This document shows positions 4,627-24,084 of a DNA stretch of 64,000 nucleotides, piece by piece. A program made the translations under genes and the position numbers. This DNA is from Oopsacas minuta (lineage: Eukaryota > Animalia > Porifera): positions 62,001 through 126,000 of the forward strand of contig JAKMXF010000297.1 of NCBI GenBank assembly GCA_024704765.1, written 5' to 3'. The notes beneath the pieces are model-generated. The model saw nothing but the letters and a program-made list of their open reading frames with translations, did not search any database and was not told the origin of the DNA. Positions within the stretch are counted from its first letter, which is position 1. Each line of letters begins with the position of its first letter.

Positions 4627-7104
4627 TTATTTGGAGGTCGAGTTAAGCAACTGTTTCAGATAAGGATACATGAGTACAACCTCTCCGTTCCTACTTACGG
4701 ATTGTTCGTAGTGAGAGAGACAATTGTGTAGAAGTTCGAGTCTAACAGTCTCTGTAGATCTTAGTAATGTATCTGAGCACTCAGCAGTGCTCCAACCTTT
4801 GAGCTGCTGGGGGGATTTGAAAGAGGGAGGGGTTCTTGAAATCAAATGAAACAGAATAAAACTTCTTGGTAGAACATCTAGTATAGTCTGACTGTTGGTC
4901 AAATCTTTAGATTCTGTATACACCAGTTTCCTCAGACAACGTAGCATACGATACGCGTGTCCTAGATCTGAAAGTCTGTTTTTACAGAGAGGAGCTACAG
5001 CTAGTTCTATTTGAGCCATGTCAGCTGTCATACGCATTAGTCCATGGTCCCCAAGTGGTCTTACTAAGCAACAATTCTGTACATAAGCTTCAATACAAAA
5101 TGTGACAATTTCTTCACATTTCGTCTGTAATAGTTCCCCACACTCGTAACATACCAAATGGTCCATATGTATCCTGGATATGAAGCTCTGTAGCTCCTTC
5201 ATGAAGTGAGAGCACTGCAGATCTTCTAGCACTAACTCATGCTTTGAATCTGTATGTGGTGGAGCTGTGTTGAAATTCTCTTCATGCATGCTCGTTAATA
5301 TCATTTGTATTGATATCTGAATCTGAGAGATGAGTGGTGATATGATCTTATCAATATCTTGCCTGAGAGTGTTCAGGATAATTTCTAAGTTCTCAACAGC
5401 TTCAGATGGAAGAGAGGGAGTATCTGATAATATCAGTTGTGTCTGACTGTAGAGCTGATATATAGCAGTAACTAAGTTCTGATTTTTGGTTTGAAGTTGA
5501 GTTGGAGTCGTTATAACTTGTACTGCTTCAGGTCCAGTCTTTAAAATCTGCTCACAGCGAGCTGAGAACAGCTTAAGACCTTTACAGATATTCTGTGCTA
5601 TGACTCTTAACAGCTTCATATCTTGAGACACTATCTATTAAGACCAAATCTGTCTAAATAATTACTATAATAGATGGAATAATAAGATCCTTACCTGTAA
5701 CTCATTACGAAATGTCTTGACAATAGTAGTAATGTCAGTAGAACTAGGAGCATTCCTGGAAGAGACTGACAGGTTAACAGGTTCTGATACACGAGAGAAG
5801 GAGCGAGAGAGGAAAGATGTCTCAAAGCTAGCTAACGCTATTCGTATTGTTACTTCAGGATCATATTCAGAAGAGATAGAGAATTGAGGTTGTTTTAATC
5901 GCGCAAATAGATCTTTGAATAACCGCAAGAGTCTGGGATACTCAGTCTCAAGAGCTTGGGAGATTTGAGAAGAAGCTCGAGTGGAGGCTCTGAGCTCAAT
6001 TGATAATATCCTAGCGGTCTCCTCCCAGAAAATAGTGGGTGGGGGAGTAAACTTCTGAGATTCAAGTTGCTCCATAAACGTCAGGTGAGTAAGAGGATCT
6101 CTCCTCTTAGCAAGTACAGTCATGAGTAACATAACTTGTGTGTGAGAGGTCTGTATATGATCCATCAGTCTCTCCAATCTAGTCCATAGATTAGCTCGTA
6201 ACACTACACTACTGGAGGCTGTCATCTGTGTGGTTCTGCTACCGGAAGTACCTAAAGATTATAACATAAGTGTAACACATTTAGAAATATTCTACAGTAA
6301 TAACTAACTTGTAATAGGTTCTTGCATAGCTGAATGATCCAATGCTACCTGCATTTCCTCCTGCAGTCTAGTAACAATATAGTGTAAAGCTTCTCTTACA
6401 TTCAGCTCTAAATCTCCCAGCTGATTGTACACCTGTAGTCCTACTCCTACCTGTGATAAGCTAGCATGTTCTAGTCCCTGATGTACCATTATTAGTGCTT
6501 GCCTCTCTACATCCTTCCTAGCACCAGCTACAAATTCTAGATCATCTTCCAGGACCTGTATTCCTGTCAAATCAGTATCACTCTGAAGGTAAGCTATGTC
6601 ACTGAGTGTCTGAGCAGCCTTTATAATCTCCTTCCCTCCGGACTGGACCTGTCCCCTGAGCTTTTTCACAAGAAATAACATCCGTATGACTCCTCTCAAA
6701 AGATCACAAGCTGTCTGCAGTCGAGACAGCTGTACTGTTCGTACTCGTAAATGTTTGAAGGGTTCTGATACACGAGTGCGGATCTTCTCTATAGATGTAG
6801 TGAGAGTAGCAATCCTCTGTCCCATCACATCAAGCACTACTTCTAACTCTTGGACACCTCTTGCATGTGCCAGGAGGTATTGATGCTTCTCTGCCACTTC
6901 AGTCTGTAGATCATCCTCAATAAGTAACAATCCCTGTGATAATCTACTGATAGCATCAACTAGTCCCATCATATCTAGCGCTGTCATAGCCAGAGACTTA
7001 TCATGATCTTGTGTAGGTTGCAGTGAGTGACGTAACAACTCGTCCTGCTCCAAATACCCAAGAGATCGGAGCTTACTACCCTCTTCGGCCCCCTCTGATG
7101 CCAT
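4627..7104 (-). CDS. COG5: Conserved oligomeric Golgi complex subunit 5; exons 6309..7104, 5695..6251, 4627..5634
   Basis: QLSRLQTACDLLRGVIRMLFLVKKLRGQ...KEIIKAAQTL and LVRPLGDHGLMRMTADMAQIELAV match COG5. Introns 6252..6308 and 5635..5694 are GT-AG and phase-compatible. Confidence 0.92.
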
Positions 7105-9680: not shown

Positions 9681-12600
9681 ATGTCGATCTCGGATCACAA
9701 TCCTGAACGACGTGGGACCACCTTCAATGAGAAGAGTTTGGACTCAGGAGATTATACCATGTCCCTCTCGAGTCACCCCCAAGAGTCACTTCGTTATGGA
9801 GACAGTATCTACCTAGTCGTGACAGGAACAGAGCCTAATTCTATCAAACTTGTGACGTCATACATCAGCAGTCCTATTCACCTTATCGTAACACTAGATG
9901 AGCATTCATACGGTGAAGATTCAGATCCTATTCCCGACTTGCATATGGCTGCATTCCGAGTGTTAGCTCCCAACAAGAGTCAAGCTCAAGACGGACTGAC
10001 TAAGTTCATGGACAAGCTAGGAGGGAGGAAGAAACTGACCCCTGAGGAAGATAATCATAATTTTCTCCTGAAGAAAGAGGTAGAGAGTGAATCGAAAGAG
10101 AATCGTAGTGAACAGAAACGCTTGATTGGTAAAGAAATAGTCTATGGTAGTTACGTACAGCTCCAGCATCACTATTCAGGAGATTACCTAGGAGTTAGTG
10201 ATAGTCAAACGTCAGTAGTTGACAGAGCTAGTCTCAAGGTTACTCTGTTTGAAACCAATGGAGATCATGTGCAGTTCAAGATAACACCCAAATACAAAGT
10301 TAGTAATATCGGTGATAAGATTCGTATTGAAGATCAGATCGTATTGGAGAATGTGAAAGCTCAGCAATACTTGCATATTAGCAACTCAGAAATACGTAAC
10401 TCCTTTTATGGAATTAATCCGAACAGTCACGAGGTGAACGCATCCGCTATTGATTCAGCCTTCTCCATATACTCACATATCAGATTAGAGCACGAGATTA
10501 CGTCATCACAGATACAGAACATCCGCGGTGGTTCAGTACTGAGACTCTATCATCTACAAGTACAGTGTTATGTGGTAGCAGCTGGGTCCTGTGGTTTTGA
10601 TGATGACCAGATAACAACTGAGGTAATTACCAATGACGTACATCTCAGAACAAGACAGATCAAGTTCGGAGACCTGAAGCCTCCATCTACATCTGCTATT
10701 ACCTACTGGGAAATAGAGTTAGCAAGATCGCCTCTCTCAGGTGATGAACTCAAATACGATGAACCTTGTCGGCTTAAGCACTTGCTAACACAGAGATATC
10801 TCTCTATTGTGACAGCTAAAGACCAATTGGAGATGAAATTGGTCAAGTTATCAGAAGATGCATCTGGGATAGATACCTGCTTCGTATTCAAACCTTTCAT
10901 CAATGAAGGAAAGGAATTGATAGAGTTTGAGTCATACGCTAGAATATATCATCCAAATACTAATAGTTGGGTTAAAGCTAGTGACAAACCTTATGAGAGT
11001 GATCATGTAGCTACTGGACCTCTTGCAATGTCTGGTTTTAGATGGGATAACGCAACCTGCTACCAAGTGCTAGTGGAACCTTCAAAGGGGTATCATGATG
11101 CGTTTACCTTAGAGCAAGTTGATGATGAGCTTTTGGGACATTTCCATTATGTACTGGGGTATCTAACTGTTATAAGGAACTATCTTCTCAGTTACAATAT
11201 AGAAATTAAGACTTCTACAGCAATGGAGCGATCTCTACAGAACCTAGCCGACTGGATGTTTGATGTAGTTGACAACAAGGACAGGAAAAAACGTCAAAAG
11301 TTACTGCGTAATCTCGGAATAATTGAGCTAATGATGGAAATACAGAATAGATTCAAAGAAATACCACATGATATGAGAACTGGGTTGAACTATGAGCGTC
11401 GTAAGAACACAACTAAGAAGATATACAAAGTAATAGAAGCATATTTGAAGGGAGACAGTCGTAAAAATGAAAACTACACCGCAAAGTTTATTCCTATATT
11501 CGAGTCTCATTTTGATCTTAACATAAACGCAGAGGCTACGCTAATTGAACTCGTACGTGACAATAAGGCAATTATTGCCCAATTTAGCGAAAATTTCCAT
11601 AAAGTTACAGAAGAATTGTTCGTAAAATTATCAGCAACTAAGAACTCAGAAATTTTCTATTATTTCGGTGTTATGTGTGTTGCGAATATGAATCCAATCC
11701 AAGAGAACCAAATTGTACTAGCGAAACAGCTTTTACTCCCTGAAGTACAAGAATCTATATTTCTAATGAAACTTGATGATCCAAATGGTGATACTCCCAC
11801 ACTCCTTGCTACCTCTCCCATTCAACCAGAGGGTTACAAACTCCTCTCTGAATATGTATCCAAGCATGATCAGAACATAATTCGACCTACTTTCCAATAT
11901 CTCCGTGCTCAGTTAGACTTCTTCTCCAACTTGTGTCAGGGAAATAACGAAAAAGCAATTAGAACCTTGCAGCAACAGTTCTCATTCGAAGTTGTATTCT
12001 CTGGCTTAACTGATGAGCTTATTCACCCACTCATACGAGTCAAGTTTGCACAGCTCATTAATACCATGTTCATTGATGTCGGAGCTAACAGAGCTGTTCT
12101 TGAGAATCTAACACTAACTTTCATCTACGAAGACTGTACTGAGAATCCAGGCGAGGAAGAACAAGGAGCGAGTAACATTGCATTGAGCGGAGTTGAGAAT
12201 GTATACTTCCCTCGAATGAGAGACTGGTTCAAAGAGTTTTTCAATAATCTAGTGATATATGGACATGAAGAATACACATATTCTAACCAACTGATTGCTG
12301 CTGTGCTGGACATGCTCTTACTATTTGTAAAGTTTGGCTATTATGATGATCATGAGGATGCTGATGTGTTACTGAACTTGCTTATTAATATATTAAATGG
12401 AAAGAAAGACAGATACTTTCCAAGAGATGGCAAATCGAAAGATCTCCCACCTGCATATGCATTCTTCAGGAAAACTGGAAGATATCAGAAGACGAAAGCA
12501 AATGCTCCTATATTCGATGTTAAAGTGAAATGTTTGCAGATATTCGAATTATTCATGAATTTCAGATTCTATAAACGATTACAACGTCTTCTTTTCCTCT

Positions 12601-15600
12601 ACAGAGTCGTTAAGAAGGAGATGAAGGTAGGTGGGGATGCACCCAGAGCAATACTCAACATCATAGAGACTCCAGAAGATGCACTCTACCATCATTTATC
12701 TCAACTACACAATCCATCATACAACATTTTACAGCACGATAATTTATCCAGGAAAGCGAATGAGCATTTAACTGAAGGAATTTTAGCATTCGCTACGTAC
12801 ATGTTTGAGAATACAGTTGGTCCTGACTCATTCGTGAATATTCTCCTTGACCTGACTCAATATGATAACCTTGATCTAGTAACAACTGCTCTCCGTCTAC
12901 TTAACAATCAATTCATGGTTGAGAATAATCTCTTCGAGAGAGCTATTCAGACTCAAGTGTTAATTAACGATAATTCTATTGAATTATTCAAAAACACAGA
13001 TCGAAATCTCCCTGAATTCCGTCGTCTATTGAAGGCATCACTCACTAACAGTGATATATGTAACCGTTTGATTGGTTTATTAGTTACTTTTGTTGAAGCT
13101 TGTGAACTGCCGAATGATAGAACAGAAGCACATCAACAGAATCAAAAGATCCTATACAACTTCGGAATACTAGAGGACGTAATGACCTTGCTTGAGAAAA
13201 CACAAGATGATCGCACTCCACTGGTTACTTCCTCACAGGCCGGTATGACTGCAGAAGATGGACCTACTCGGCTAGCTAAAGTAGCATGTGTTCTCTTATG
13301 TAGGATGGCAACAGACAACCTCGTGGTACAACAACGGTTGTACAATCGTCTCGAGATCCTAACTAATGAAACATTATTTGATTGTGCTCCTCACCAGTTG
13401 TCCAGCTTACTAACTCAACTATTTACAGGGGCACAGGACATTGTGATGAACGTGAAAGCAGATGACATCAAGTTGATCTGCTCACTGATGAGACCCAGAG
13501 ATACCCTACAGCTGGAAGATATTCCTCCTATCATAGAAATCCTGAAGGCAATTACAAAAGTAGAAGAAATAGATCTTCCTCTTCATTTCAATCAAGTTCA
13601 CATTATGAACAGCTTTATGCCAATCAAGCCTAAACACATTGATAATATTCTCGGAACAGAAGATGGGAAATCTGCTAGGAGGATGGAGCTGTTGAATTCT
13701 GAAAACCCTCAAGATGATGATTTGATAATACTTAATTTGATGTTATCTACATACGATCTGATGGCCTCACTCTGTGAAGGAGAGAACCTACATCACGAAT
13801 CAGTTTGTCAGTCAATGATTACACAAGAAGAACTTCTTGAAATTCTCAACAACAAGAAATTACCTTTCGATAGGAAATACCAGTTCGCCTCCTTTTTCAA
13901 CTGGGTCTACCTGAACACTCATAAGACCTCTTCTAGTTATGACGGGGCCAGTGTAGATGATGATCCAGCTTTCTGGGAATTCCTTGAGAACACAAATGAT
14001 GTTTTATCCGCCATGTTAGCTTACTTGGACAGAACTTCTCCAGAGGAAGCCTCAAATATCAGAAAGACTATTCGTAACCAGGGTGATAGTTCTCTAAAAT
14101 CTGATATATCTGGTTCAGATGCTAAATCTTCCATGCTGTATATTGGCACTTTCGATTTCGGTTTAATTAACTATCTGATGAAAGGTATCCTCCCTATTAT
14201 CCTAGTGTTCTACCCTCGATACTTCTCTACCCGTAAGAAGGAAGATGAAGCTCTCAAGGCGTTTGACCCCTTGATGATATCATTCAGTATTTGTGGGAAA
14301 CTTTTCGAGCTTTCAATCAAGTTACAGACATTCCTAGCTACCCAATATCATGCTAAGCTACTCTATAACGCAGCTCTTGCTATACTAACACACCCAGAGA
14401 TCAGATCACTGCCTCTTGATAAGATTGCTTCTTATGTAGACAGTGAACAGCTCAAACAATTCTCATTTTTAGTTAGAGATGAGAATAAATTCGTTGCTCA
14501 ACCAATCAGAGACTACAATCTTGAATATATGGCAGAGATACAATTGAATGATCAGTTCAATACTTACGTTAAACATATTAGGAGAGCATATTGGCGTAAG
14601 AACACGGTTAAAGACCAAATTGGAGCAATGCACCACACTCCTTATTCACAGTTCCTGGATCCTCTTTGTGAACATCCTTCTCCTGATGCTATGCCTCTAG
14701 GTCCTTCGTTCCAAAAACATTTGAAATTATTCTTTAAACACACAGACGATGGTTGTAAAGTAGAACACTCAATCGCGAGAAGTATTGTTTTACAGCTAAA
14801 ATATTCGTATGACAACTTTTATAATCTGAATGAGAGGGAGAAGTTAAAACAGGAACGACTTGACACTAAATCTTTACAGCTGTTACGTGGTGCAATTCAC
14901 AATGAAATTTTGTATATCGACCCAACATTGAAAGACGACAGGCCAGTACAGTTTAGAAATGAATTGGAAAAAGTTGAGTATGTTCAGAAAGCAATAGAAG
15001 ATCTTGATAACACTTGTATCAAGGCTTTAATATTGATAGATCATCCTAGCAAATCTGTTTCTTCTCAGAGCATAGCTCTACTCGCTGACATGCTGTATGG
15101 AGGTAACGAGTATATTCAAACACAGCTTCAAGCTTTAGCTGATACACGTGAAGAGAAATTCTTTGATCAGATGGAAGCTATCCTATTCTATGGTGGCAAT
15201 AGTTTGGTAGAGAGTCGGTCTCTTGCTGATGAACTCGAGAAACGAAGTTCATTCTTCAAAGAAATGAGAGAGCATCTTAGTCAATTGGTTATCCTCCTCA
15301 CAGACGCACCAAGACCTACAACTGCAGAACTCCGTAGATCTCCTACATTCACTACTGTGGACAGAGACGATGAAGGTGATAAGAAGCCTCTCGTATTGGA
15401 TAAAAGTGCCATTGAGTTACAGCCTGTAGTCCGAACTAATTTGAGCCTTGATTTAAACGCTCCGTTATCTTATAACGAACAACCAACAAAGTTTGGTGAA
15501 GAACCTGAAGAAACAGTTAATATATTATCAAGGATGGAACTGATCCGAGAAGAAGCTCAGATGATGGCTGCAGCTGGAGCTAGTGATTCTGCACTACAAG

Positions 15601-17777
15601 GAGTTGCATATCAGAATAACCTTAGAAATATACAGGTATCATTCAGACTGATGGGTCTTATGTGTGATGGTCAGCAAAAGTTTCTACAGGATTATTTCCG
15701 TGAACAGCCAGATAATCCTGAGAATATTAACATGGTGATAAAGACAGTAAACTTCCTAAAGATATTCTACACAGATATCAATCAAGATAATATCGGTCTA
15801 GTCGAAGAGGTGTTCAGATCTTTAACTGAATTTGTTAGTGGAAACTTTGATAATCAGAACGATGCTTACGGCGCTAAAATAATGGATGTTGTTAATCGCA
15901 TATTTCAAACTCCAACATTTAAATCTTGCTCTCTTGGAGATATGGTAAACTTATATGACTCGATAATACGTTTCCTACAAGTGATGCTGGAGGAGACTAG
16001 CCTACAGACCAAGGTCCTAGCTAAAGAACTGTACACTGTATTGGATATTGGTAGTGTTCATCAGGTGATTGCATTGCTCTATCAAGTTAGAAGTGATAAC
16101 ACTGTGGATAGCGCTATCCGAGATATAGCTGATGAAGATTTATTCCGTTTATACCATTTTATCATTCACTTACGTGATTTTGACGCTATCCTACAATCTG
16201 AAGATAGTTCCCGTATAATTCCCCAGGAGAATGTAGATCAAGAATCAGTACTGAGAGCCTGGAATTTCTGTACAAACCGGTCTAAATCCGTCGAGGTAAC
16301 ATACTACACAGAAGACAACACACCTATCTTAAACAAGGTTCATTTCAAGAGTTTAGATTCAGGGAACTTATCAGAGGATGTTCGAGAAAATGTGAAATGG
16401 AATATTAACCGCGATTCTGCAGAGGACAAACTTAGAGACTTTTTAGACTGGTTCAAAGCTGTGAAAATCGACCAAAATTACAGCTACAAATTAAGAAATA
16501 CCTTTGGGATAAAGTTATACCTCAAATTTCAAACTTTCAGAAAATACTTTTTCTTACTTTGGTCTCTCCTGATAAACATCTTTTTACTGTCAACTTGGAA
16601 CTCTCCTTGCGTTTCTGTTAGCACTAACACAATTAATGACACTACAATGTATAGTTGCAGTAGAGTTAATCCAGAGGTAGTGCTTACCCCACCAATCCCA
16701 CCTGTAGTCCCAGATTGGTATAGTTATGCGTTCTTCCCACTTGGCGCTATCCACCTCTTGCTTGCTCTAGATCTCTTAATATTATTCTATATCGTGAATG
16801 GTATTAACTTTTATATCCCAGGTATTTTCCATCGAATTATTCCGGTAGGATTTGATAAGAGGAATTATCGCATCAAGTGGAAGCAGCCTCCAGAAAGAAG
16901 GTATCTTCAGATTAACATCATTGGTCCTAAGGTTATTTTTATCTGGATGATCTTCCTTTCTTCCATACTTTCACTACCATTCCATGGGTACTTCTACCCA
17001 ATTTCCCTGCTTTTCATTTTGGAGAGGAGTGATATATTACAACGTGTGTTGCTAGCTGTTACTAAGAATGGGAAATCTCTCATTTTCGTTGCAATATTCG
17101 GGGTTATTGTGATATATATATTCTCAGTTGCTGGATTTGCTCTATTCTACGAGCAGGCACAAGCTACCATTGAACCTGGCAATTCAGAGTACGTATTCTG
17201 TAGAAATCTTTTTGAGTGTTTCATCAGTATAGGTAGATGGGGTCTTATAGAAACAGTAGCGGTCATTCTTCCTCAGAGAACTGCAAATTTTGTTGGAGAA
17301 ATAGACCGTATTATCTTCGATGTATTATTCTTTGTCATTGTTACGGTGATTGGATTGAATATCGTGTTTGGTATAATAGTGGATACATTCTCAGAGCTTA
17401 GGGACGAGAAGTACTCACAGGAGAAAGACATGAAGAGTGTGTGCTTCATTTGTGGAATTGAAAACTACCTCTTTGACCGGAAGGGGAAAGGCTTCAAGAC
17501 TCATGTCAAACATGAACACAACATGTGGGACTATTACAGCTTCTTCCTGTATCTAGATAGCGTGGATCCTAGCGACCATACTGCAACTGAAAGCTTTGTG
17601 TTCAAGAAGTTGGAAGAGGATGAGACTATCTTCTTTCCTCAAAATGCTGCACGCTCCATCCCGGTTGAAGAAGACGAGACTGCACATGAACTGACCATAC
17701 TTGTCAACAAACTTGAAGAACAATCCAACCAACTCAAGGACATTCTGAATAGAGTAAAGAAACTCGAGAAAAACTAG
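9681..17777 (+). CDS. ITPR: Inositol 1,4,5-trisphosphate receptor-like Ca2+ release channel, 2698 aa, intronless and divergent
   Basis: N-terminal suppressor/MIR beta-trefoils (YGSYVQLQH, TYWEIE), RIH segments (RQKLLRNLGI, DSRKNENY), RIH-associated region (RLMGLMCDGQQKFLQDYFREQ), six TM helices, LNIVFGIIVDTFSELRDEK and C2H2 CFICG...HVKHEHNMWDY. Confidence 0.93.
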   Translation: MSISDHNPERRGTTFNEKSLDSGDYTMSLSSHPQESLRYGDSIYLVVTGTEPNSIKLVTSYISSPIHLIVTLDEHSYGEDSDPIPDLHMAAFRVLAPNKSQAQDGLTKFMDKLGGRKKLTPEEDNHNFLLKKEVESESKENRSEQKRLIGKEIVYGSYVQLQHHYSGDYLGVSDSQTSVVDRASLKVTLFETNGDHVQFKITPKYKVSNIGDKIRIEDQIVLENVKAQQYLHISNSEIRNSFYGINPNSHEVNASAIDSAFSIYSHIRLEHEITSSQIQNIRGGSVLRLYHLQVQCYVVAAGSCGFDDDQITTEVITNDVHLRTRQIKFGDLKPPSTSAITYWEIELARSPLSGDELKYDEPCRLKHLLTQRYLSIVTAKDQLEMKLVKLSEDASGIDTCFVFKPFINEGKELIEFESYARIYHPNTNSWVKASDKPYESDHVATGPLAMSGFRWDNATCYQVLVEPSKGYHDAFTLEQVDDELLGHFHYVLGYLTVIRNYLLSYNIEIKTSTAMERSLQNLADWMFDVVDNKDRKKRQKLLRNLGIIELMMEIQNRFKEIPHDMRTGLNYERRKNTTKKIYKVIEAYLKGDSRKNENYTAKFIPIFESHFDLNINAEATLIELVRDNKAIIAQFSENFHKVTEELFVKLSATKNSEIFYYFGVMCVANMNPIQENQIVLAKQLLLPEVQESIFLMKLDDPNGDTPTLLATSPIQPEGYKLLSEYVSKHDQNIIRPTFQYLRAQLDFFSNLCQGNNEKAIRTLQQQFSFEVVFSGLTDELIHPLIRVKFAQLINTMFIDVGANRAVLENLTLTFIYEDCTENPGEEEQGASNIALSGVENVYFPRMRDWFKEFFNNLVIYGHEEYTYSNQLIAAVLDMLLLFVKFGYYDDHEDADVLLNLLINILNGKKDRYFPRDGKSKDLPPAYAFFRKTGRYQKTKANAPIFDVKVKCLQIFELFMNFRFYKRLQRLLFLYRVVKKEMKVGGDAPRAILNIIETPEDALYHHLSQLHNPSYNILQHDNLSRKANEHLTEGILAFATYMFENTVGPDSFVNILLDLTQYDNLDLVTTALRLLNNQFMVENNLFERAIQTQVLINDNSIELFKNTDRNLPEFRRLLKASLTNSDICNRLIGLLVTFVEACELPNDRTEAHQQNQKILYNFGILEDVMTLLEKTQDDRTPLVTSSQAGMTAEDGPTRLAKVACVLLCRMATDNLVVQQRLYNRLEILTNETLFDCAPHQLSSLLTQLFTGAQDIVMNVKADDIKLICSLMRPRDTLQLEDIPPIIEILKAITKVEEIDLPLHFNQVHIMNSFMPIKPKHIDNILGTEDGKSARRMELLNSENPQDDDLIILNLMLSTYDLMASLCEGENLHHESVCQSMITQEELLEILNNKKLPFDRKYQFASFFNWVYLNTHKTSSSYDGASVDDDPAFWEFLENTNDVLSAMLAYLDRTSPEEASNIRKTIRNQGDSSLKSDISGSDAKSSMLYIGTFDFGLINYLMKGILPIILVFYPRYFSTRKKEDEALKAFDPLMISFSICGKLFELSIKLQTFLATQYHAKLLYNAALAILTHPEIRSLPLDKIASYVDSEQLKQFSFLVRDENKFVAQPIRDYNLEYMAEIQLNDQFNTYVKHIRRAYWRKNTVKDQIGAMHHTPYSQFLDPLCEHPSPDAMPLGPSFQKHLKLFFKHTDDGCKVEHSIARSIVLQLKYSYDNFYNLNEREKLKQERLDTKSLQLLRGAIHNEILYIDPTLKDDRPVQFRNELEKVEYVQKAIEDLDNTCIKALILIDHPSKSVSSQSIALLADMLYGGNEYIQTQLQALADTREEKFFDQMEAILFYGGNSLVESRSLADELEKRSSFFKEMREHLSQLVILLTDAPRPTTAELRRSPTFTTVDRDDEGDKKPLVLDKSAIELQPVVRTNLSLDLNAPLSYNEQPTKFGEEPEETVNILSRMELIREEAQMMAAAGASDSALQGVAYQNNLRNIQVSFRLMGLMCDGQQKFLQDYFREQPDNPENINMVIKTVNFLKIFYTDINQDNIGLVEEVFRSLTEFVSGNFDNQNDAYGAKIMDVVNRIFQTPTFKSCSLGDMVNLYDSIIRFLQVMLEETSLQTKVLAKELYTVLDIGSVHQVIALLYQVRSDNTVDSAIRDIADEDLFRLYHFIIHLRDFDAILQSEDSSRIIPQENVDQESVLRAWNFCTNRSKSVEVTYYTEDNTPILNKVHFKSLDSGNLSEDVRENVKWNINRDSAEDKLRDFLDWFKAVKIDQNYSYKLRNTFGIKLYLKFQTFRKYFFLLWSLLINIFLLSTWNSPCVSVSTNTINDTTMYSCSRVNPEVVLTPPIPPVVPDWYSYAFFPLGAIHLLLALDLLILFYIVNGINFYIPGIFHRIIPVGFDKRNYRIKWKQPPERRYLQINIIGPKVIFIWMIFLSSILSLPFHGYFYPISLLFILERSDILQRVLLAVTKNGKSLIFVAIFGVIVIYIFSVAGFALFYEQAQATIEPGNSEYVFCRNLFECFISIGRWGLIETVAVILPQRTANFVGEIDRIIFDVLFFVIVTVIGLNIVFGIIVDTFSELRDEKYSQEKDMKSVCFICGIENYLFDRKGKGFKTHVKHEHNMWDYYSFFLYLDSVDPSDHTATESFVFKKLEEDETIFFPQNAARSIPVEEDETAHELTILVNKLEEQSNQLKDILNRVKKLEKN

Positions 17778-18629
17778 CTACTGAACTTATAGTAAATTAT
17801 TAGATTTTAATTCATTCGTTTAGATTTCTTTTCTTACTTTTAGCTTTTGCTTTTAACCCAGTATATTTTATTTATTTTATTACCATTTATAGCCAGCTGT
17901 TGGCATGGTTATATATGTTTGTATGTGTTTATCTCTATTTAGATTTTAGTTTTGATCTGTAATAAAATATATGAGATTATTAATATTATGTATGATATCC
18001 AGGGAGGGTTAATTTCAATAAATTAATTATTCAGAATGCAAATAACTGTATCGTGGTGATGTTAATAATTAAGTGACGTAGTTGAGAATGTAATATTTAT
18101 ACATATCATCTTCAAAACAAAAGTTAATCATTTATATATTCTCCTTTTCACAGAATTAGATTGATGTATTTTCATTTCATTCCTAATATTATTTGTTGAC
18201 AATACACATTACTGTCCATACATTACGTATGTTGCCAGGTGGCTGGAGCAATCAACCTATTTAGCGACGAGTATCACACGGTTGCTGGTCGGAAACATCT
18301 ATAAATATACCTGTGCTGTCTGTTAAGGATATATTTATGACTATTTCACTTACTCCATTTGCAAATCTTCGTTGCTATAGATTGCCATATTCTTAAATTG
18401 TTGCAGCACTCAGTTACAAAATCATCAGTTTTAATCCATTACGTTAACTTTCCCATGTAGGCCAGTGTTCCTTTTTCAGCTCTGCTATGTACCCCTTATC
18501 TATTTTATATGTGGACCACTCCTGAAAAACCAAAAACATAAATCTACTCTTGATAAACATATCAGATGATGTAATTGTAAATTTGGTAATTTGAGTAATA
18601 AATAATTGAATTGTTATTGTTCACATAGA

Positions 18630-19265
18630 ATGAACAACCTCTACACCAGTCCTCCTCCAATTGCTGTGAGTGAAGAGCTGTATGAAAACGCTGAAACTAT
18701 ACTCCGCAATAGTTCACAGCCGAATTATAGTTTCGTTTCAAACAGTGATACCCTGATCCATCCTGTAGCCTGTTCCCCACCTCAATCCGCTCAGAAGAGC
18801 TATGAACTGGCTGATCTCTACGATGAGCTTCAACGATACAAAAGAGACAACGAAGCTCTGAGAAAAAATTTAGATTTCACATATAATAAACATGAAGAAA
18901 TTGTTAGAAGATTGCAGACAAAGATATTTGACCTTGAGAAGGAAAGAGAAATAATACCTGTTACTAGGCCACCAGCTACACGATCTGAATCTGTTTGCTA
19001 CGATCGTATGCCTAATATGCATGCCAATCTGTCAGAACTATCCAAATATAGAGATGAAGCCATGAATCTACAGGCAGTGGTTGTCGCGTACCAAGAAGAC
19101 GTAAAGAACATCAACGAACAACTAAATGAGTGTCAGAGAGCTAAGAACGTTTTGTCCAGAGAGGCTCAGGAGAGAAATGAGAAGATTGTAGGTTTGGAGA
19201 ATGAAATTGCTTCTCTCACATTTCTTCTCAAAGATTATTCATCAGCAAGGAATGTTAATCTTTAA
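18630..19265 (+). CDS. Uncharacterised coiled-coil protein (first ATG 18630; the ORF track starts at TTG 18606)
   Basis: Open frame of ~210 codons with two heptad-rich segments. An acceptor-like cacatag sits just before the ATG, so a 5' exon is possible. Confidence 0.65.
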   Translation: MNNLYTSPPPIAVSEELYENAETILRNSSQPNYSFVSNSDTLIHPVACSPPQSAQKSYELADLYDELQRYKRDNEALRKNLDFTYNKHEEIVRRLQTKIFDLEKEREIIPVTRPPATRSESVCYDRMPNMHANLSELSKYRDEAMNLQAVVVAYQEDVKNINEQLNECQRAKNVLSREAQERNEKIVGLENEIASLTFLLKDYSSARNVNL

Positions 19266-19471
19266 TTTGATTATTTCAGTATTTGGAATTTTGTAATGCA
19301 GCTGTACATACATATACATGTTGAATTCTTTGTTTGTTTATATGCTTAAATAATATATGCGTACATATATGGATATTTTGACATATGATCACGTCATCGA
19401 TATTAGTTGTGTACTCCGGAGAATTATGAATATATATATACATTTCAAAACGAACAGGTTTATACCTAGAG

Positions 19472-21544
19472 ATGGAGAGTAAGGTAGACATCGTTCAGTT
19501 AAATGTAGGAGGTCGTAGATTCACTACCTCTAAACAGACTCTAACTTGGATACCTGAATCATTCTTTGTGAGTCTTCTAAGTGGACGTATACCGTCAATG
19601 CGTGATGAGATTGGAGCAATATTTATTGATAGAGATCCAGACATGTTTGAGATAATTCTACATTTTATGCGCACCAAAGAAGTAAATCCTAAAGGTCATA
19701 ATATTCGTAATCTCCGTACAGAAGCTGAGTATTACGGCCTACAGCCGTTAGTTATCCGGTTGAATCTATGTGACGAGTTAGAAAGGTCTCTATGTGGAGA
19801 CATCCTATTCTCTGGAATTATGCACCCACAGGACTTCACAACGGACCAAGAATCTACCTTATCGGTCCAATCTAGCTCTACAGACTCTAGTAGTATGGTG
19901 CTAACAATGACCAGCTGTGGTAATTGGGTGGGTGTAGCTTACATACATCACATCTGTTGCTACAGTCTAGAGGAAAGTATGGGGTGGCAACGAAGCTTCT
20001 ACTCTCCTCTCCTCTCCAAACCTCCTGAAAAGATTACTCTTAACACGAAGGGACACTTAATGCTAGCTGCTTCATTCGGTAATGAAATAAAATTATGGAA
20101 TTGTAAGCCTCAAGCTCAGCAAGTGGAAATAGGTACATTTGACCTGAAGAGTCCAGTTAGTGCTCTATTCTTCATTGGTCCTCAGCTAGTGGCGATTAGC
20201 AGTGTTGGGAAGGTAGGAGTATGGCATTATAGCAATCAGAACTGGACAGCTCAAGGGGTGTACGAAATAACCAGTTATACCTCCGTAGGATCTCTCCTTG
20301 TATGGGGGTCATCTAACGGAATTATAAACTCTATAGACGTACAGAAGTTCCCTCTCCGTATGAGTGACAATGATCTCTTGATAGTAGAGCTATTCAATGA
20401 CCCTCTGCATGAACCTCCTACAGCCATGAGTGTGTTTGGTAACCCAGGAGCTGGTAACGTGAGGAACAGCTGGAGTGACGTAGAGTCGATAGGTAGATGG
20501 CTAGAAGTGGCTTATGGTACCACTAGTGGTAAGATTAGGATTGTAGTACAACATCCTGAGAACTTTGGTCACGGTTTTCAGATTGTACAAACTCTGACTG
20601 TCCATACTAGTCAGATTTATACTATGTTCTTGGGAGAGAAACATCTAATATCTGTGTGTGCAGATCTTCACGTCAGGACATGGAAACTGACTCGATTCAG
20701 AGGCAGACTTGCCACCCAACCCGGACCCACCCCCCTCGCATCCTACCGTCTCCTCTCCCTTGACGCTGCTGTATGTACCCCTCTCTGCTCATTTCAGGGT
20801 CCCTTCGGAGAGCTAGACAACCAACAAGTATTTCTACAGAAAGTTGTACCTGACACTAACACTTTGTTTGTACGTCTATCTTCAACCGGAGCTCGTGTCT
20901 CTAAGATACAATCTGTAGATAATAGTAACATAACAGCTTACTACGTACACGAGTGCGAAGCTCTAGGGAGGCTAGGCTATAGACCTAGGAAGTTTGTATT
21001 CACAGGACATATAAACGGTAGTGTACAGTTATGGGACTTAACTCATACTCTCAATTCACTGAGTGAGAATACAACTGATATGACAGAAGGTGGACCCAAA
21101 CAATCTGAGTTATTAGATCTCTTAAAGCATTGCGATCTGTCTACGTCTAGATCATCTAGTCGTGTGACGTCAGTAAATCCCTCTCCTAGTCCCTCTGTAC
21201 TCAGCGTGAGGTTCCCACAGCTCCGTCCCTCTATTCCTATTACTGTCAACACGCACAGCCCTCTCCTTAGAAGAACTGCATCTCTCCATAGTATAACTAC
21301 TCTCAATTCCTATCTGAGACAGCCCTACTTGCTTACCCGTACAGACTCCTCTAGTAATTCTAGTATCTACACAGATGAACATGAGTTTACTTTGGGAGAT
21401 GGCATCAGTCAAATCGTAACCCCCTCTCCCTTAGAGCCTATATACTCACAAGACAATAACTCCCCTCTGACAGAGAACAATACTCCCACAGCTCAACCTC
21501 ACTTCAACTTATTCATTCAAGATAAACCAGATGCTGATGTATGA
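19472..21544 (+). CDS. KCTD3: BTB/POZ plus WD40-like protein, KCTD3/SHKBP1 family
   Basis: VQLNVGGRRFTTSKQTLTWIPESFFVSLLSGRI and IFIDRDP (BTB), then DVQKFPLRMSDNDLLIVELFNDP, EVAYGTTSGKIRIVVQHPE and FTGHINGSVQLWDL. Confidence 0.93.
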   Translation: MESKVDIVQLNVGGRRFTTSKQTLTWIPESFFVSLLSGRIPSMRDEIGAIFIDRDPDMFEIILHFMRTKEVNPKGHNIRNLRTEAEYYGLQPLVIRLNLCDELERSLCGDILFSGIMHPQDFTTDQESTLSVQSSSTDSSSMVLTMTSCGNWVGVAYIHHICCYSLEESMGWQRSFYSPLLSKPPEKITLNTKGHLMLAASFGNEIKLWNCKPQAQQVEIGTFDLKSPVSALFFIGPQLVAISSVGKVGVWHYSNQNWTAQGVYEITSYTSVGSLLVWGSSNGIINSIDVQKFPLRMSDNDLLIVELFNDPLHEPPTAMSVFGNPGAGNVRNSWSDVESIGRWLEVAYGTTSGKIRIVVQHPENFGHGFQIVQTLTVHTSQIYTMFLGEKHLISVCADLHVRTWKLTRFRGRLATQPGPTPLASYRLLSLDAAVCTPLCSFQGPFGELDNQQVFLQKVVPDTNTLFVRLSSTGARVSKIQSVDNSNITAYYVHECEALGRLGYRPRKFVFTGHINGSVQLWDLTHTLNSLSENTTDMTEGGPKQSELLDLLKHCDLSTSRSSSRVTSVNPSPSPSVLSVRFPQLRPSIPITVNTHSPLLRRTASLHSITTLNSYLRQPYLLTRTDSSSNSSIYTDEHEFTLGDGISQIVTPSPLEPIYSQDNNSPLTENNTPTAQPHFNLFIQDKPDADV

Positions 21545-21641
21545 CTGTTATAGTATTATTAATTATTCACATTACTGTTGTTATCATGTAAATATACCAA
21601 GTGGATAAGTTCATTTTTGATTATTTACAATTCGTTCTGTT

Positions 21642-22043
21642 ATGTCAGCTACCATGCCCAACTCTGGGATGTTAGACCACATTCGTTATAAGACACCGAC
21701 CCTGAATATGAGAGGCATCCGTTATGACGTCAACTGGCTCCCCTCTAAGCCACATACAGCGCTGGGCTATCATACACCCCGTCCTTCCGCGAAGTACTCC
21801 AGACACAGGAGCGGTATTTTCACACCTACAAACCCCCCTCCAACTGCGAGGAGCTTTTCTTCTCCTATCAATACCGTCCACCAGTCTCCAGGTCACAATC
21901 TAATCAGACAGATGAGGAATAACGAGTTATCTCCCTTCTTCACGCTCGGTAAAGTAACATGTGGGTATTACTACGATAGGTCTACAGATCATAAGAAGCG
22001 ATTCACAGGACTTATTGCTACCGACCCTGTCAAGTGGAGATGA
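21642..22043 (+). CDS. Uncharacterised 133-aa protein
   Basis: ATG-initiated ORF with coding-like GC content between two genes; C-terminal CGYYYDRSTDHKKRFTG...DPVKWR looks like a conserved motif, but I do not recognise the family. Confidence 0.6.
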   Translation: MSATMPNSGMLDHIRYKTPTLNMRGIRYDVNWLPSKPHTALGYHTPRPSAKYSRHRSGIFTPTNPPPTARSFSSPINTVHQSPGHNLIRQMRNNELSPFFTLGKVTCGYYYDRSTDHKKRFTGLIATDPVKWR

Positions 22044-22322
22044 TATTAATTCATATAATAACCTAATCTAACCCCCACCACTTTCTGTTATAGATATATT
22101 TTATTTATGCTCTATCCCATTTATCCAATACTTCATTTTACTTATACAGTCTATAGTGTATATTGTTAATTAATCTAGCTTTATATGTAAGACATAACAT
22201 CCATTGTTTAGACTCTTTAGACAATTATTCCGATTGTTCGAGCTATTTCAAATGGTTATTTATCATGTCTTCATATATTTTTCATAAAATTTTAGTTTGA
22301 GATTATTTCTACTTATTGATTG

Positions 22323-22481
22323 ATGGGAAGGAAGAAGGCTTACGTGGTAGTACGAGTGCTTAGTCTAGCGGGGACCGGATTCTTCTATAGTATGAGGAGG
22401 AAGAGGGCAGATCCCAAGATTACTATGATAAGATTTGATCCTGTAGTTAAATCAAAGGTATTATTTTCTGAGAAAAAATGA
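22323..22481 (+). CDS. MRPL33: Mitochondrial ribosomal protein bL33m, 52 aa (below the ORF-track cutoff)
   Basis: Manual translation MGRKKAYVVVRVLSLAGTGFFYSMRRKRADPKITMIRFDPVVKSKVLFSEKK* carries the L33 motifs S-x-AGTGFFY and FDPVV...VLF-x-EKK. Confidence 0.9.
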   Translation: MGRKKAYVVVRVLSLAGTGFFYSMRRKRADPKITMIRFDPVVKSKVLFSEKK

Positions 22482-22925
22482 AAACTATTATTATTTATCT
22501 TTAACTGAGCCTTACTGATTCTATGGGCATCTCAACGTATGAATATAATTTGAATTTTAGTAGGTTCATCATCAATATGCTTCAAACTCCGCAAATACTA
22601 TCCATTGTATGATACGAGTCAGCTGTCAGCATTTCATTATCATTATCTCATAATATTTTTATGCAATTATGTCTTCACCATAGACTATTTTTAATTAGTT
22701 ATTGTGTTGAACTATATCAAGCAGGTTATGCTTCTAAATTTATCGTATACTCACAATTATCTAGCAAAGACGCTTCGGAATCATTAAGATTATTCATAAT
22801 ACAGAGTCAATTACGTGAATAGGCGAAATTCGTACAATTAACTGCTATGAATGTTATGAATGATATTTATTATTATTATTATTGATAATAATAATAATAA
22901 TAAAATAATTGGAGCTGATTTTAAC

Positions 22926-22950
22926 TACAGTAGACCTCGGATAGCACGTA
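22926..22950. mobile_element. Solo pogo/Tigger-like TIR remnant
   Basis: TA|CAGTAGACCTCGGATAGC resembles pogo-type left termini; no partner TIR found. Confidence 0.3.
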
Positions 22951-23040
22951 CAAATCTTGTTACCAGAAAGAATATCTCTTACCTGAGTTCTTATGTAATA
23001 GTGGTCTCATTTAATTCATTAATAACTTAGCTCTAAATTG

Positions 23041-24084
23041 ATGGATCCAAATAAGTCTCGAAATTTCCGTTACTTCAAAGGGTTAACCACGCAGAAATCC
23101 CACTCACTTCAAAATGGCAGTAAACATGCACCAAATAAGAGACCTAACAAAACGAAAACAAGGACCAAATCTCTTAAGAAACAAATCCATGATACCCAAC
23201 GTCTCTTATTCAAGAATATTCTGTCTGAAGAAGGTGTCAAATCACAACAAGATAAGCTAGATAAACTGAAGAAGGCATATTCTGAAGAGAGACGGGATAG
23301 AAAAACTAATAAGAAATTCGCAAGGTATAAACCTATAAAGTTCTTTGATAAAAGAAAAGTATTGAAAAAACTCAATTCTCTCCACAAAATACTCCCTGAA
23401 GCTGATGATGAAGCTAGCAGTATGTTAGAAAAGGAATTTGATTTATACAAGGGCTATCTAAACTACATAATCTACTTCCCAGAGGATAAAAAGTACATTT
23501 CACTATTCCCGAATTCAGAGCGTTTAGATTCCAGTGCTCAGGAACAGCTGGATATTCTGTTACAAGAGATTAATTCTAAAGTGAAGGAAGGTTTGTATGC
23601 CAACGCCTGGACAGCATACTTAGCTAAAACGCCTATTGATCCAATCGCTCAAGATTCCGTATTACAAGAAATACAAGAACAGTTAATTAATAATCCTACG
23701 CCATTCCCTGTGTCTTCTACAGCCTCTCCAATGTTTATACCAATTGACACAGACAATCAAACAAGCATGAAAACTAAATCACCGAGTTCAACAAAAAAGC
23801 AGTTAAGTAAAAAATTACATTTTGATAAAAGTATTGACACGTCACTAGATAACCATATAAAGTTACAGTCAACAGATGACAACAATATGTCTCAAATGGA
23901 ATGTGCAGAAGATCTGAGATCTGATAGCTTCTTTTTCTTCGATACGATGGGGAGCGAGGTAGATACGAATCTCTTTAAAAACAGACCTCAGAAGAGAAAT
24001 TTCCAGGATACAAGAAATCCCAAACCTAATCCCAGAAATAGGAATTCAAAACCAAATCAGAAGCACAGAGGTCATCAGTATTAG
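23041..24084 (+). CDS. EFG1: rRNA-processing protein Efg1-like (DUF2361)
   Basis: LKKQIHDTQRLL, RYKPIKFFDKRK and LNYIIYFPEDKKYISLFP follow the Efg1 consensus; basic termini suggest a nucleolar protein. ATG at 23041. Confidence 0.75.
   Translation: MDPNKSRNFRYFKGLTTQKSHSLQNGSKHAPNKRPNKTKTRTKSLKKQIHDTQRLLFKNILSEEGVKSQQDKLDKLKKAYSEERRDRKTNKKFARYKPIKFFDKRKVLKKLNSLHKILPEADDEASSMLEKEFDLYKGYLNYIIYFPEDKKYISLFPNSERLDSSAQEQLDILLQEINSKVKEGLYANAWTAYLAKTPIDPIAQDSVLQEIQEQLINNPTPFPVSSTASPMFIPIDTDNQTSMKTKSPSSTKKQLSKKLHFDKSIDTSLDNHIKLQSTDDNNMSQMECAEDLRSDSFFFFDTMGSEVDTNLFKNRPQKRNFQDTRNPKPNPRNRNSKPNQKHRGHQY

What the first reader, a model, noticed from the sequence alone, without database searches (positions are those of the whole stretch)
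17221..17290. IP3R-like channel has lost the canonical GGGVGD selectivity filter
Seen: after the pore helix the sequence reads FISIGRWGLIETVAVILPQ. Established: IP3Rs and RyRs carry GLR-S/A-GGG-V/I-GD here. All the filter glycines and the Asp are absent and the loop is about two residues shorter. TM6 (LNIVFGIIVDTF) and the C2H2 zinc finger are intact, and the 2698-codon frame is uninterrupted, so this is not a pseudogene. Inference: a channel with altered selectivity or conductance, or a non-conducting regulatory subunit.
Basis: partly seen in the sequence, partly recalled or inferred. Interest (0 to 1): 0.75.

Follow-up and report, generated by a model that had tools for sequence, protein, structure and literature searches.

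The report
Sponge IP3R-like channel with rebuilt pore
A glass-sponge relative of the IP3 receptor calcium channel has replaced the nearly universal GGGxGD ion filter with a different, strictly conserved loop. This trait is shared by most animal members of the little-studied IP3R-B family, so it is a testable natural pore variant, not a one-off loss.

Summary
ORF 9681-17777 (+) encodes 2698 aa with no stop and the full IP3R domain set. Opposite ITPR2 GLRNGGGVGDVL it reads GLIETVAVIL, and the stretch to S6 is two residues shorter. S6, the C2H2 zinc finger, the Ca2+-sensor acids and most IP3-contact basic residues are kept.

It is not an assembly error: two short-read contig sets and one long contig from the same sample agree with no differences.

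It is not a pseudogene. Six syntenic, intronless orthologues keep the loop while synonymous sites are saturated (dN/dS below 0.05). The pore region is the slowest-evolving part.

The loss is not special to this gene:
- The protein falls in a holozoan clade separate from classical IP3Rs. The clade fits the published IP3R-B family.
- All 39 GGG-less sequences in my set lie in this clade: demosponges, glass sponges, Trichoplax, molluscs, annelids and hemichordates.
- Homoscleromorph sponges and most choanoflagellates keep GGGLGE.
- Demosponges and glass-sponge paralogues share a related motif, [DE]-[TN]-[ILV]-G-x.

My best reading (about 0.5) is a working ligand-gated channel with altered permeation. 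A non-conducting subunit remains possible. I found no functional or RNA data.

The scan noted a rebuilt RyR pore elsewhere in this genome, but not this gene.

The parts
9681..17777 (+). Intronless CDS of the IP3R-B-type channel, 2698 aa plus stop
   Evidence: orthologues of 2696-2708 aa
9783..11750 (+). N-terminal ligand-binding region: Ins145_P3_rec (aa 35-263), MIR (336-439), RIH (526-690)
   Evidence: Pfam; IP3R1 N-terminal structures at E about 1e-31
10641..10667 (+). HLRTRQIKF: R323 and T324 match IP3R1 R265 and T266; the TTGR loop is replaced (R269 aligns to I327)
11280..11312 (+). DRKKRQKLLRN: K536, R538, K540 and R543 match IP3R1 R504, R506, K508 and R511
11454..11477 (+). DSRKNENY: S593, R594 and K595 match IP3R1 Y567, R568 and K569
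15615..15905 (+). RIH_assoc domain holding the Ca2+-sensor acids D1996 (hIP3R3 E1882) and E2050 (hIP3R3 E1946)
   Evidence: role of E1946 from PMC9522344
16893..17408 (+). Ion_trans channel domain (aa 2405-2576); S5 is aa 2466-2490 (17076-17150)
17208..17249 (+). Pore helix, aa 2510-2523
   Evidence: AlphaFold2 model helix 286-299; alignment to the ITPR2 pore helix
17241..17288 (+). Non-canonical filter loop GLIETVAVILPQRTAN (aa 2521-2536); E2524 and T2525 are the only polar residues at its start
17289..17408 (+). S6 with gate F2563 and V2567 and cytosolic acids D2568 and D2575 (RyR1 D4938 and D4945)
   Evidence: PMC5715910
17442..17519 (+). C2H2 zinc finger: C2588, C2591, H2608, H2613
17676..17774 (+). 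C-terminal helix aligned to the ITPR2 C-terminal tail (I recall it as a coiled coil; not tested here)
   Evidence: alignment runs to ITPR2 residue 2670

Best explanation
The gene encodes a working tetrameric intracellular cation channel of the IP3R-B branch of the IP3R/RyR superfamily. It is probably still gated from the cytosolic side by Ca2+ and by IP3 or a related inositol phosphate. The canonical glycine-rich filter has been exchanged for a short, mostly hydrophobic loop, E-T-V-A-V-I-L. Permeation would then depend on a ring of four Glu2524 carboxylates and Thr2525 hydroxyls at the end of the pore helix, not on the GGGxG carbonyls and the Asp ring. Conductance and ion selectivity should therefore differ from classical IP3Rs. 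Shown here: the sequence, its conservation, its phylogenetic place, and the retention of the gating parts. Inferred: that it conducts, which groups line the pore, and what the ligand is.
For: The full IP3R architecture and fold are present. Purifying selection is strong, with saturated synonymous sites (dS above 2, dN 0.09-0.19). The S5-S6 region evolves more slowly than the whole gene (dN 0.064 against 0.091 versus the nearest orthologue). The filter codons differ synonymously in all six orthologues while the peptide is unchanged apart from I/V at 2523 (two orthologues) and L/F at 2530 (one). A related motif, G-L-x-[DE]-[TN]-[ILV]-G-x, is kept in glass-sponge paralogues and in demosponges (Dysidea, Amphimedon). 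This is conservation of a new motif, not drift. Pore-lining and gating parts that a dead pore would not need are all kept: the S6 gate F2563/V2567, D2568 and D2575, the zinc finger, the Ca2+-sensor acids D1996/E2050, and the C-terminal tail. The basic residues matching IP3R1 R265, R506, K508, R511, R568 and K569 are kept across the clade. An acidic residue stands at the E2524 column in 27 of 39 GGG-less sequences but in 1 of 50 GGG-bearing ones.
Against: In mammalian IP3Rs a single glycine change in GGGxG (IP3R2 G2498S; IP3R1 G2506R or G2506A) gives a dead pore (PMC7939385), and here all of them are changed. The one IP3R-B that I know to have been tested, from Capsaspora, is reported not to bind IP3 (PMC9113742, citing Alzayady 2015, which I could not read). 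R269, whose mutation lowers IP3 binding (PMC7939385), has no clear counterpart, and Y567 is Ser. The acid/GGG association rests on only 5-6 independent contrasts and is not significant. The model's filter loop has low confidence (pLDDT about 55), and no tetramer could be modelled. No RNA run was found.
Confidence: 0.5

Rival explanations
1. It is a non-conducting protein. It keeps the IP3R scaffold for ligand sensing, buffering, tethering or regulating other channels, but passes no ions on its own.
For: Single filter-glycine substitutions kill mammalian IP3R pores (PMC7939385). The canonical Asp ring is gone. Capsaspora IP3R-B is reported not to bind IP3 (PMC9113742), and from my memory of Alzayady 2015, not checked here, it did not release Ca2+ either. 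GGG was lost about six times within this clade and nowhere outside it, which could mean the pore was already dispensable in this family.
Against: The pore helix, filter loop and S6 are the most conserved part of the gene, and the new motif is shared by two sponge classes. The gate and vestibule residues are retained. A scaffold role does not explain that.
Confidence: 0.25
2. It is an obligate heteromer partner. It assembles with the second glass-sponge paralogue type (filter DTIGL or DTIGQ) or with another family member and tunes conductance or gating of a mixed pore.
For: One glass-sponge assembly (ERZ25072730) holds three paralogues with two filter types, and another (ERZ20067936) holds two. 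From general knowledge, not tested here, mammalian IP3R isoforms form heterotetramers.
Against: No co-expression or interaction data exist. The paralogues are only about 60% identical in the channel domain. I have not shown that the window's own genome holds the second type.
Confidence: 0.15
3. It is an assembly error or a decaying pseudogene.
For: None found beyond the unusual sequence itself.
Against: Three contig sets from the same sample show zero differences, and a related species covers the filter without indels. The 2698-codon frame is open. Six intact syntenic orthologues show dN/dS below 0.05.
Confidence: 0.02

Closest known systems
IP3R-B family (IP3RB; Alzayady et al. 2015, as cited in PMC7992859 and PMC9113742)
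   Same: In my tree the protein sits in a 70-sequence holozoan clade (SH-aLRT 99). The clade also holds Lottia, Saccoglossus, Salpingoeca rosetta and Corallochytrium proteins and excludes insect IP3Rs. Its spread matches the published family: present in lophotrochozoans and hemichordates, and unreported in vertebrates, Drosophila and C. elegans (PMC7992859). It has the same domain set as IP3Rs.
   Different: Unlike the choanoflagellate and homoscleromorph members (GGGLGE), it has no glycine filter. Its ETVAV version occurs only in one glass-sponge orthologue group. Whether the published description mentions filter loss I could not check, because the paper is not held.
Classical IP3 receptors (ITPR1-3, insect and nematode IP3R; IP3R-A)
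   Same: It has the N-terminal beta-trefoil/ARM ligand-binding region, RIH and RIH_assoc domains, a six-helix channel domain, the zinc finger, the C-terminal tail, the Ca2+-sensor acids, and most IP3-contact arginines and lysines.
   Different: The filter GGG[VI]GD is absent. The TTGR loop of the IP3 site is replaced and Y567 is Ser. The luminal S5-pore loop is short. It falls outside the classical clade.
Ryanodine receptors
   Same: It shares the pore domain, zinc finger and Ca2+ sensor.
   Different: It has no SPRY or RyR-repeat domains and is about half the size. An earlier scan note reports that a RyR in this genome also has a rebuilt filter (GQIPGGTLNL). I did not check that.
K+/CNG/NaK-type filters (T-V/I-G-Y-G and relatives)
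   Same: PMC5715910 states that GGGIG resembles the K+ channel filter motif TV/IGYG. Laying the two motifs side by side, which is my own pairing by eye and was not computed, puts T-V-A-V (and the paralogues' T-I-G-L) on T-V-G-Y.
   Different: This is only a positional resemblance recalled from a motif. The Gly needed for a K+-type filter is Ala here. No test was possible. I do not claim membership or K+ selectivity.

Membership tests
IP3R/RyR superfamily | Ins145_P3_rec + MIR + RIH + RIH_assoc + C-terminal Ion_trans domains | tested here: met
   All five Pfam families score above their gathering cut-offs.
IP3R/RyR superfamily | Channel-domain fold like solved IP3R/RyR transmembrane domains | tested here: met
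   The AF2 model has pLDDT 80.6. Foldseek gives probability 1.0 to IP3R1, IP3R3 and RyR1 chains.
IP3R/RyR superfamily | GGG[VI]G[DE] selectivity filter after the pore helix | tested here: not met
   The loop reads ETVAVIL. Nearly all pore-bearing representatives outside the B clade have the motif.
Classical IP3R (IP3R-A) | Groups with vertebrate and insect IP3Rs in a tree | tested here: not met
   Insect IP3Rs fall outside the 70-sequence clade that holds the window protein.
Classical IP3R (IP3R-A) | IP3-coordinating residues R265, T266, T267, G268, R269, R504, K508, R511, Y567, R568, K569 | tested here: inconclusive
   R265, T266, K508, R511, R568 and K569 are kept, and R504 is Lys. T267, G268, R269 and Y567 are changed. 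No binding assay was done.
Classical IP3R (IP3R-A) | Ca2+-activation site (hIP3R3 E1882, E1946, T2581 backbone) | tested here: met
   The matching residues are D1996, E2050 and S2631. The role of E1946 is from PMC9522344. E1882 and T2581 are from my memory of the hIP3R3 structures.
IP3R-B | Clade with lophotrochozoan, hemichordate and choanoflagellate IP3R-like proteins, separate from IP3R-A and RyR | tested here: met
   Tree. The family's species list is in PMC7992859. Equating my clade with the published family rests on shared species (Lottia, Saccoglossus), not on shared sequences.
IP3R-B | No IP3 binding (reported for the Capsaspora member) | not testable with these tools
   Known to me only through a citation in PMC9113742. 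It needs a binding assay.
Ryanodine receptor | SPRY and RyR-repeat domains, about 5000 aa | tested here: not met
   No such Pfam hits; the protein is 2698 aa.

The most novel reading that the evidence does not exclude
Demosponges and glass sponges replaced the near-universal GGGxGD filter of an IP3R-type channel with a different working filter, [DE]-[TN]-[ILV]-[GA]-x. Its ion preference could be new for this superfamily, for example a Glu-ring Ca2+ filter or a monovalent-cation pore. If so, most animal IP3R-B proteins form an unrecognised functional class of intracellular channels.
Probability: 0.3. Interest if true: 0.75.

Novelty: new variant of a known kind. Interest (0 to 1): 0.5.

Why it matters
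The GGGxGD loop is treated as the invariant ion filter of IP3 and ryanodine receptors, and single glycine changes in it cause human disease by killing the pore (PMC7939385). Here the whole motif is replaced, yet the pore region stays under very strong constraint over a divergence deep enough to saturate synonymous sites. The same is true, with other sequences, for most animal IP3R-B proteins. The papers I could read call this family understudied, and one member marks leech touch neurons (PMC7992859). If these proteins conduct, the rules for permeation in this superfamily are wider than thought. If they do not, animals keep a large IP3R-shaped protein for another job. Either answer can be reached with existing IP3R-null cell lines. 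Glass sponges are of extra interest because they propagate Ca2+-dependent action potentials and seem to lack Nav and Kv channels (PMC10280926).

Tried and rejected
1. Assembly error: rejected by laid contigs.
2. Pseudogene: rejected by dN/dS and orthologue conservation.
3. Expression: the one run search found no RNA run, so expression of this gene is untested here.
4. The primary paper on IP3R-A/B (Alzayady 2015) is not held. I therefore could not check whether filter loss in IP3R-B was already described. Full-text searches for IP3R-B, Capsaspora and selectivity filter found no such statement.
5. I tried to learn whether sponges also have a classical IP3R:
   - A representative search with an insect IP3R pore domain, plus two cluster look-ups, named nematodes, flatworms, a rotifer, a mite, a choanoflagellate, ichthyosporeans, Corallochytrium and Fonticula, but no sponge.
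   - This is not conclusive, because sponge proteins could be hidden inside larger clusters or among unnamed representatives.
6. I tested whether filter loss happened more than once in animals:
   - The free tree puts GGG-keeping homoscleromorphs with the other sponges, which implies two losses.
   - The AU test does not reject one clade of all GGG-less animal sequences (p 0.30). I therefore do not claim the number.
7. The acidic residue at the E2524 column as compensation: the raw association is strong, but there are too few independent contrasts.
8. The monomer AF2 model gives no pore geometry.
Full report
**What is there**

Window 9681-17777 (+) is one uninterrupted ORF of 2698 codons. Pfam finds Ins145_P3_rec, MIR, RIH, RIH_assoc and a C-terminal Ion_trans domain, all above their cut-offs, and no SPRY or RyR repeats.

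The C-terminal 525 residues match solved ITPR2, ITPR1, ITPR3 and RyR chains at E 1e-41 to 1e-30. The N-terminus matches the IP3R1 ligand-binding structures at about 1e-31. An AlphaFold2 model of residues 2225-2640 has mean pLDDT 80.6. Foldseek matches it to IP3R1, IP3R3 and RyR1 chains with probability 1.0.

**The observation**

- HMMER places GLIET--VAVIL opposite ITPR2 GLRNGGGVGDVL.
- MAFFT aligns the same residues without a gap.
- In both alignments the three glycines, the fourth glycine and the Asp are all replaced.
- The stretch from GL to S6 is 25 residues against 27 in ITPR2.
- S6 (LNIVFGIIVDTF, 2559-2570) and the zinc finger (C2588, C2591, H2608, H2613) are intact.

For contrast, I searched 1.8 billion cluster representatives with an insect IP3R pore domain. 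Nearly all hits that include the pore carry GGG[IV]G[DE], from vertebrates down to fungi-related and protist lineages.

**Not an artefact**

Contigs from three runs of one sample cover 16266-18256 with zero differences. Two runs are short-read type with Nextera adaptor remnants, and one gives a single long contig. They come from one individual, and the long-contig run may be the assembly's source.

A run from another organism covers 15679-17603 in one contig at about 96% identity, without indels. A second, more divergent contig in that run breaks at 17248/17346. At about 86% identity it is probably a paralogue.

**Not a pseudogene**

Six orthologues are all single ORFs of 2696-2708 aa (the window, P0002, P0003, P0004, P0005 and P0006). 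Two of the loci have a sacsin gene upstream. Two have a roughly 205-aa ORF plus a BTB_2/WD40 gene downstream, as the window does at 18606-21544.

Synonymous sites are saturated between them (dS above 2), while dN is 0.09-0.19. Where dS could be estimated, dN/dS is 0.03-0.05. The S5-S6 region changes more slowly than the whole gene.

In the filter, the codons for E, T, V, A and L differ synonymously from species to species. The peptide stays GRWGL[IV]ETVAVI[LF]PQ.

**Where it belongs**

I built a tree from 89 sequences and 685 C-terminal columns, leaving the filter columns out.
- The window protein sits in a glass-sponge clade (support 100).
- That clade is sister to a demosponge clade with Dysidea and Amphimedon (99).
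- Next come the homoscleromorphs Corticium and Oscarella (97).
- The sister group is Trichoplax plus hemichordates, molluscs, annelids, nemerteans, brachiopods and flatworms (99).
- Choanoflagellates and Corallochytrium join further out (99 for the whole 70-sequence clade).
- Insect IP3Rs lie outside.

This spread matches the IP3R-B family as later papers describe it. It is present in Lottia, Helobdella, Capitella and Saccoglossus, not reported in vertebrates, absent from Drosophila and C. elegans, and 'understudied' (PMC7992859).

I call the organism a glass sponge on the word of earlier scan notes. My tree fits that but does not prove it.

**The loss is a family trait**

All 39 GGG-less sequences in the set lie in this clade. 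The fewest changes on the tree is six.

| Group | Filter region |
|---|---|
| Homoscleromorphs, most choanoflagellates | GGGLGE |
| Demosponges | DTIGL, DNLGF, DNIGL, DNLGL |
| Second glass-sponge paralogue type | DTIGL, DTIGQ |
| The window's orthologue group | ETVAV |
| Bilaterians and Trichoplax | unrelated strings such as DSPYT, GDMFE, DGLQE |

The demosponge and glass-sponge versions share a motif, G-L-x-[DE]-[TN]-[ILV]-[GA]-x. Its persistence across two sponge classes argues for a constrained new structure, not decay.

The number of losses among animals is open. The free tree implies two, but the AU test does not reject a single GGG-less animal clade (p 0.30).

One glass-sponge assembly (ERZ25072730) holds three paralogues with both filter types, and another holds two.

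**What else is kept**

- Ca2+ sensor: the window has D1996, E2050 and S2631 opposite hIP3R3 E1882, E1946 and T2581. E1946 is needed for activation (PMC9522344).
- IP3 site: R323, T324, K536, R538, K540, R543, R594 and K595 match IP3R1 R265, T266, R504, R506, K508, R511, R568 and K569.
- IP3 site, changed parts: the TTGR loop is replaced, so R269 has no clear counterpart, and Y567 is Ser.
- These IP3-site features are shared by the whole B clade.
- Pore: the S6 gate F2563/V2567 and the cytosolic acids D2568 and D2575 are present. They correspond to RyR1 D4938 and D4945, which matter for conduction (PMC5715910).

**How it most likely works**

The pore parts are the most conserved part of the protein, and all gating parts are retained. 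I therefore favour a conducting, ligand-gated tetramer with a different filter (confidence 0.5).

The model ends the pore helix at I2523 and starts S6 at 2537. The loop has low confidence. The only polar groups at its start are E2524 and T2525, so I infer that four Glu and four Thr side chains take over cation coordination.

An acid at this column is found in 27 of 39 GGG-less sequences and 1 of 50 GGG-bearing ones. With only 5-6 independent contrasts this is suggestive only.

One lead from a motif, not a test: PMC5715910 states that GGGIG resembles the K+ channel motif TV/IGYG. Pairing the two motifs by eye (my own pairing, not computed) puts T-V-A-V on T-V-G-Y. The Ala in place of Gly speaks against a K+-type filter.

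**Rivals**

- A non-conducting protein (0.25). Single filter-glycine changes kill mammalian pores (PMC7939385), and the Capsaspora IP3R-B is cited as unable to bind IP3 (PMC9113742).
- A heteromer-only subunit (0.15). This is suggested by the co-resident paralogues.
- Artefact or pseudogene is rejected (0.02).

**Novelty**

The family is known. I found no functional data, and no description in the papers I could read, for any GGG-less member. The key paper is not held, so prior mention cannot be excluded.

An earlier scan note reports a rebuilt RyR filter in the same genome. I did not check it. If both hold, glass sponges have altered pores in both branches of the superfamily.

I rate this a new variant of a known kind, with moderate interest.

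Noticed in passing
L009:3237-11295: The DTIGL-type paralogue in assembly ERZ20067936 (P0009) is called as two overlapping ORFs of 934 aa and 1764 aa that meet at 6001-6041. This could be a frameshift, a short intron or an assembly error.
   Followed up: no
L001, L005, L008 (assembly ERZ25072730): One glass-sponge genome carries three intronless IP3R-B-type genes on different contigs, with two different filter motifs (ETVAV; DTIGL and DTIGQ).
   Followed up: partly
window:17248-17346: In run X5 (another organism) one short contig at about 86% identity aligns only from 17346 onward and shows a 97-base break across the filter. A second contig at about 96% identity spans the region without gaps. 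The first is probably a paralogue.
   Followed up: no
P0017 and P0014 (JGI, unnamed; demosponge-side clade): P0017 keeps GGG but has lost the following acid (GLIMGGGLVTNA). Its sister P0014 reads GLLNGAILTNGD. These look like intermediate states of filter loss inside the demosponge clade.
   Followed up: no
window:1134-7104 (-) and 18606-24084 (+): The neighbours are ordinary, mostly single-ORF genes: a class II tRNA synthetase piece, axonemal dynein light chain, CHORD/CS protein, COG5, a 219-aa coiled-coil-like ORF, a BTB_2/WD40 protein and Efg1. The last ORF before the BTB_2 gene and that gene itself are syntenic in two other glass-sponge assemblies (L006, L007).
   Followed up: partly
P0046, P0091, P0048, P0060: Two sequences that fall inside the choanoflagellate clade (P0046, P0091) and two unnamed holozoan-clade sequences (P0048, P0060) also lack GGG (GFTDGLGTAL, GLRDGVIFPG, GLISGLTP, GLQEPLGL). 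Filter loss in this family is therefore not limited to animals.
   Followed up: no
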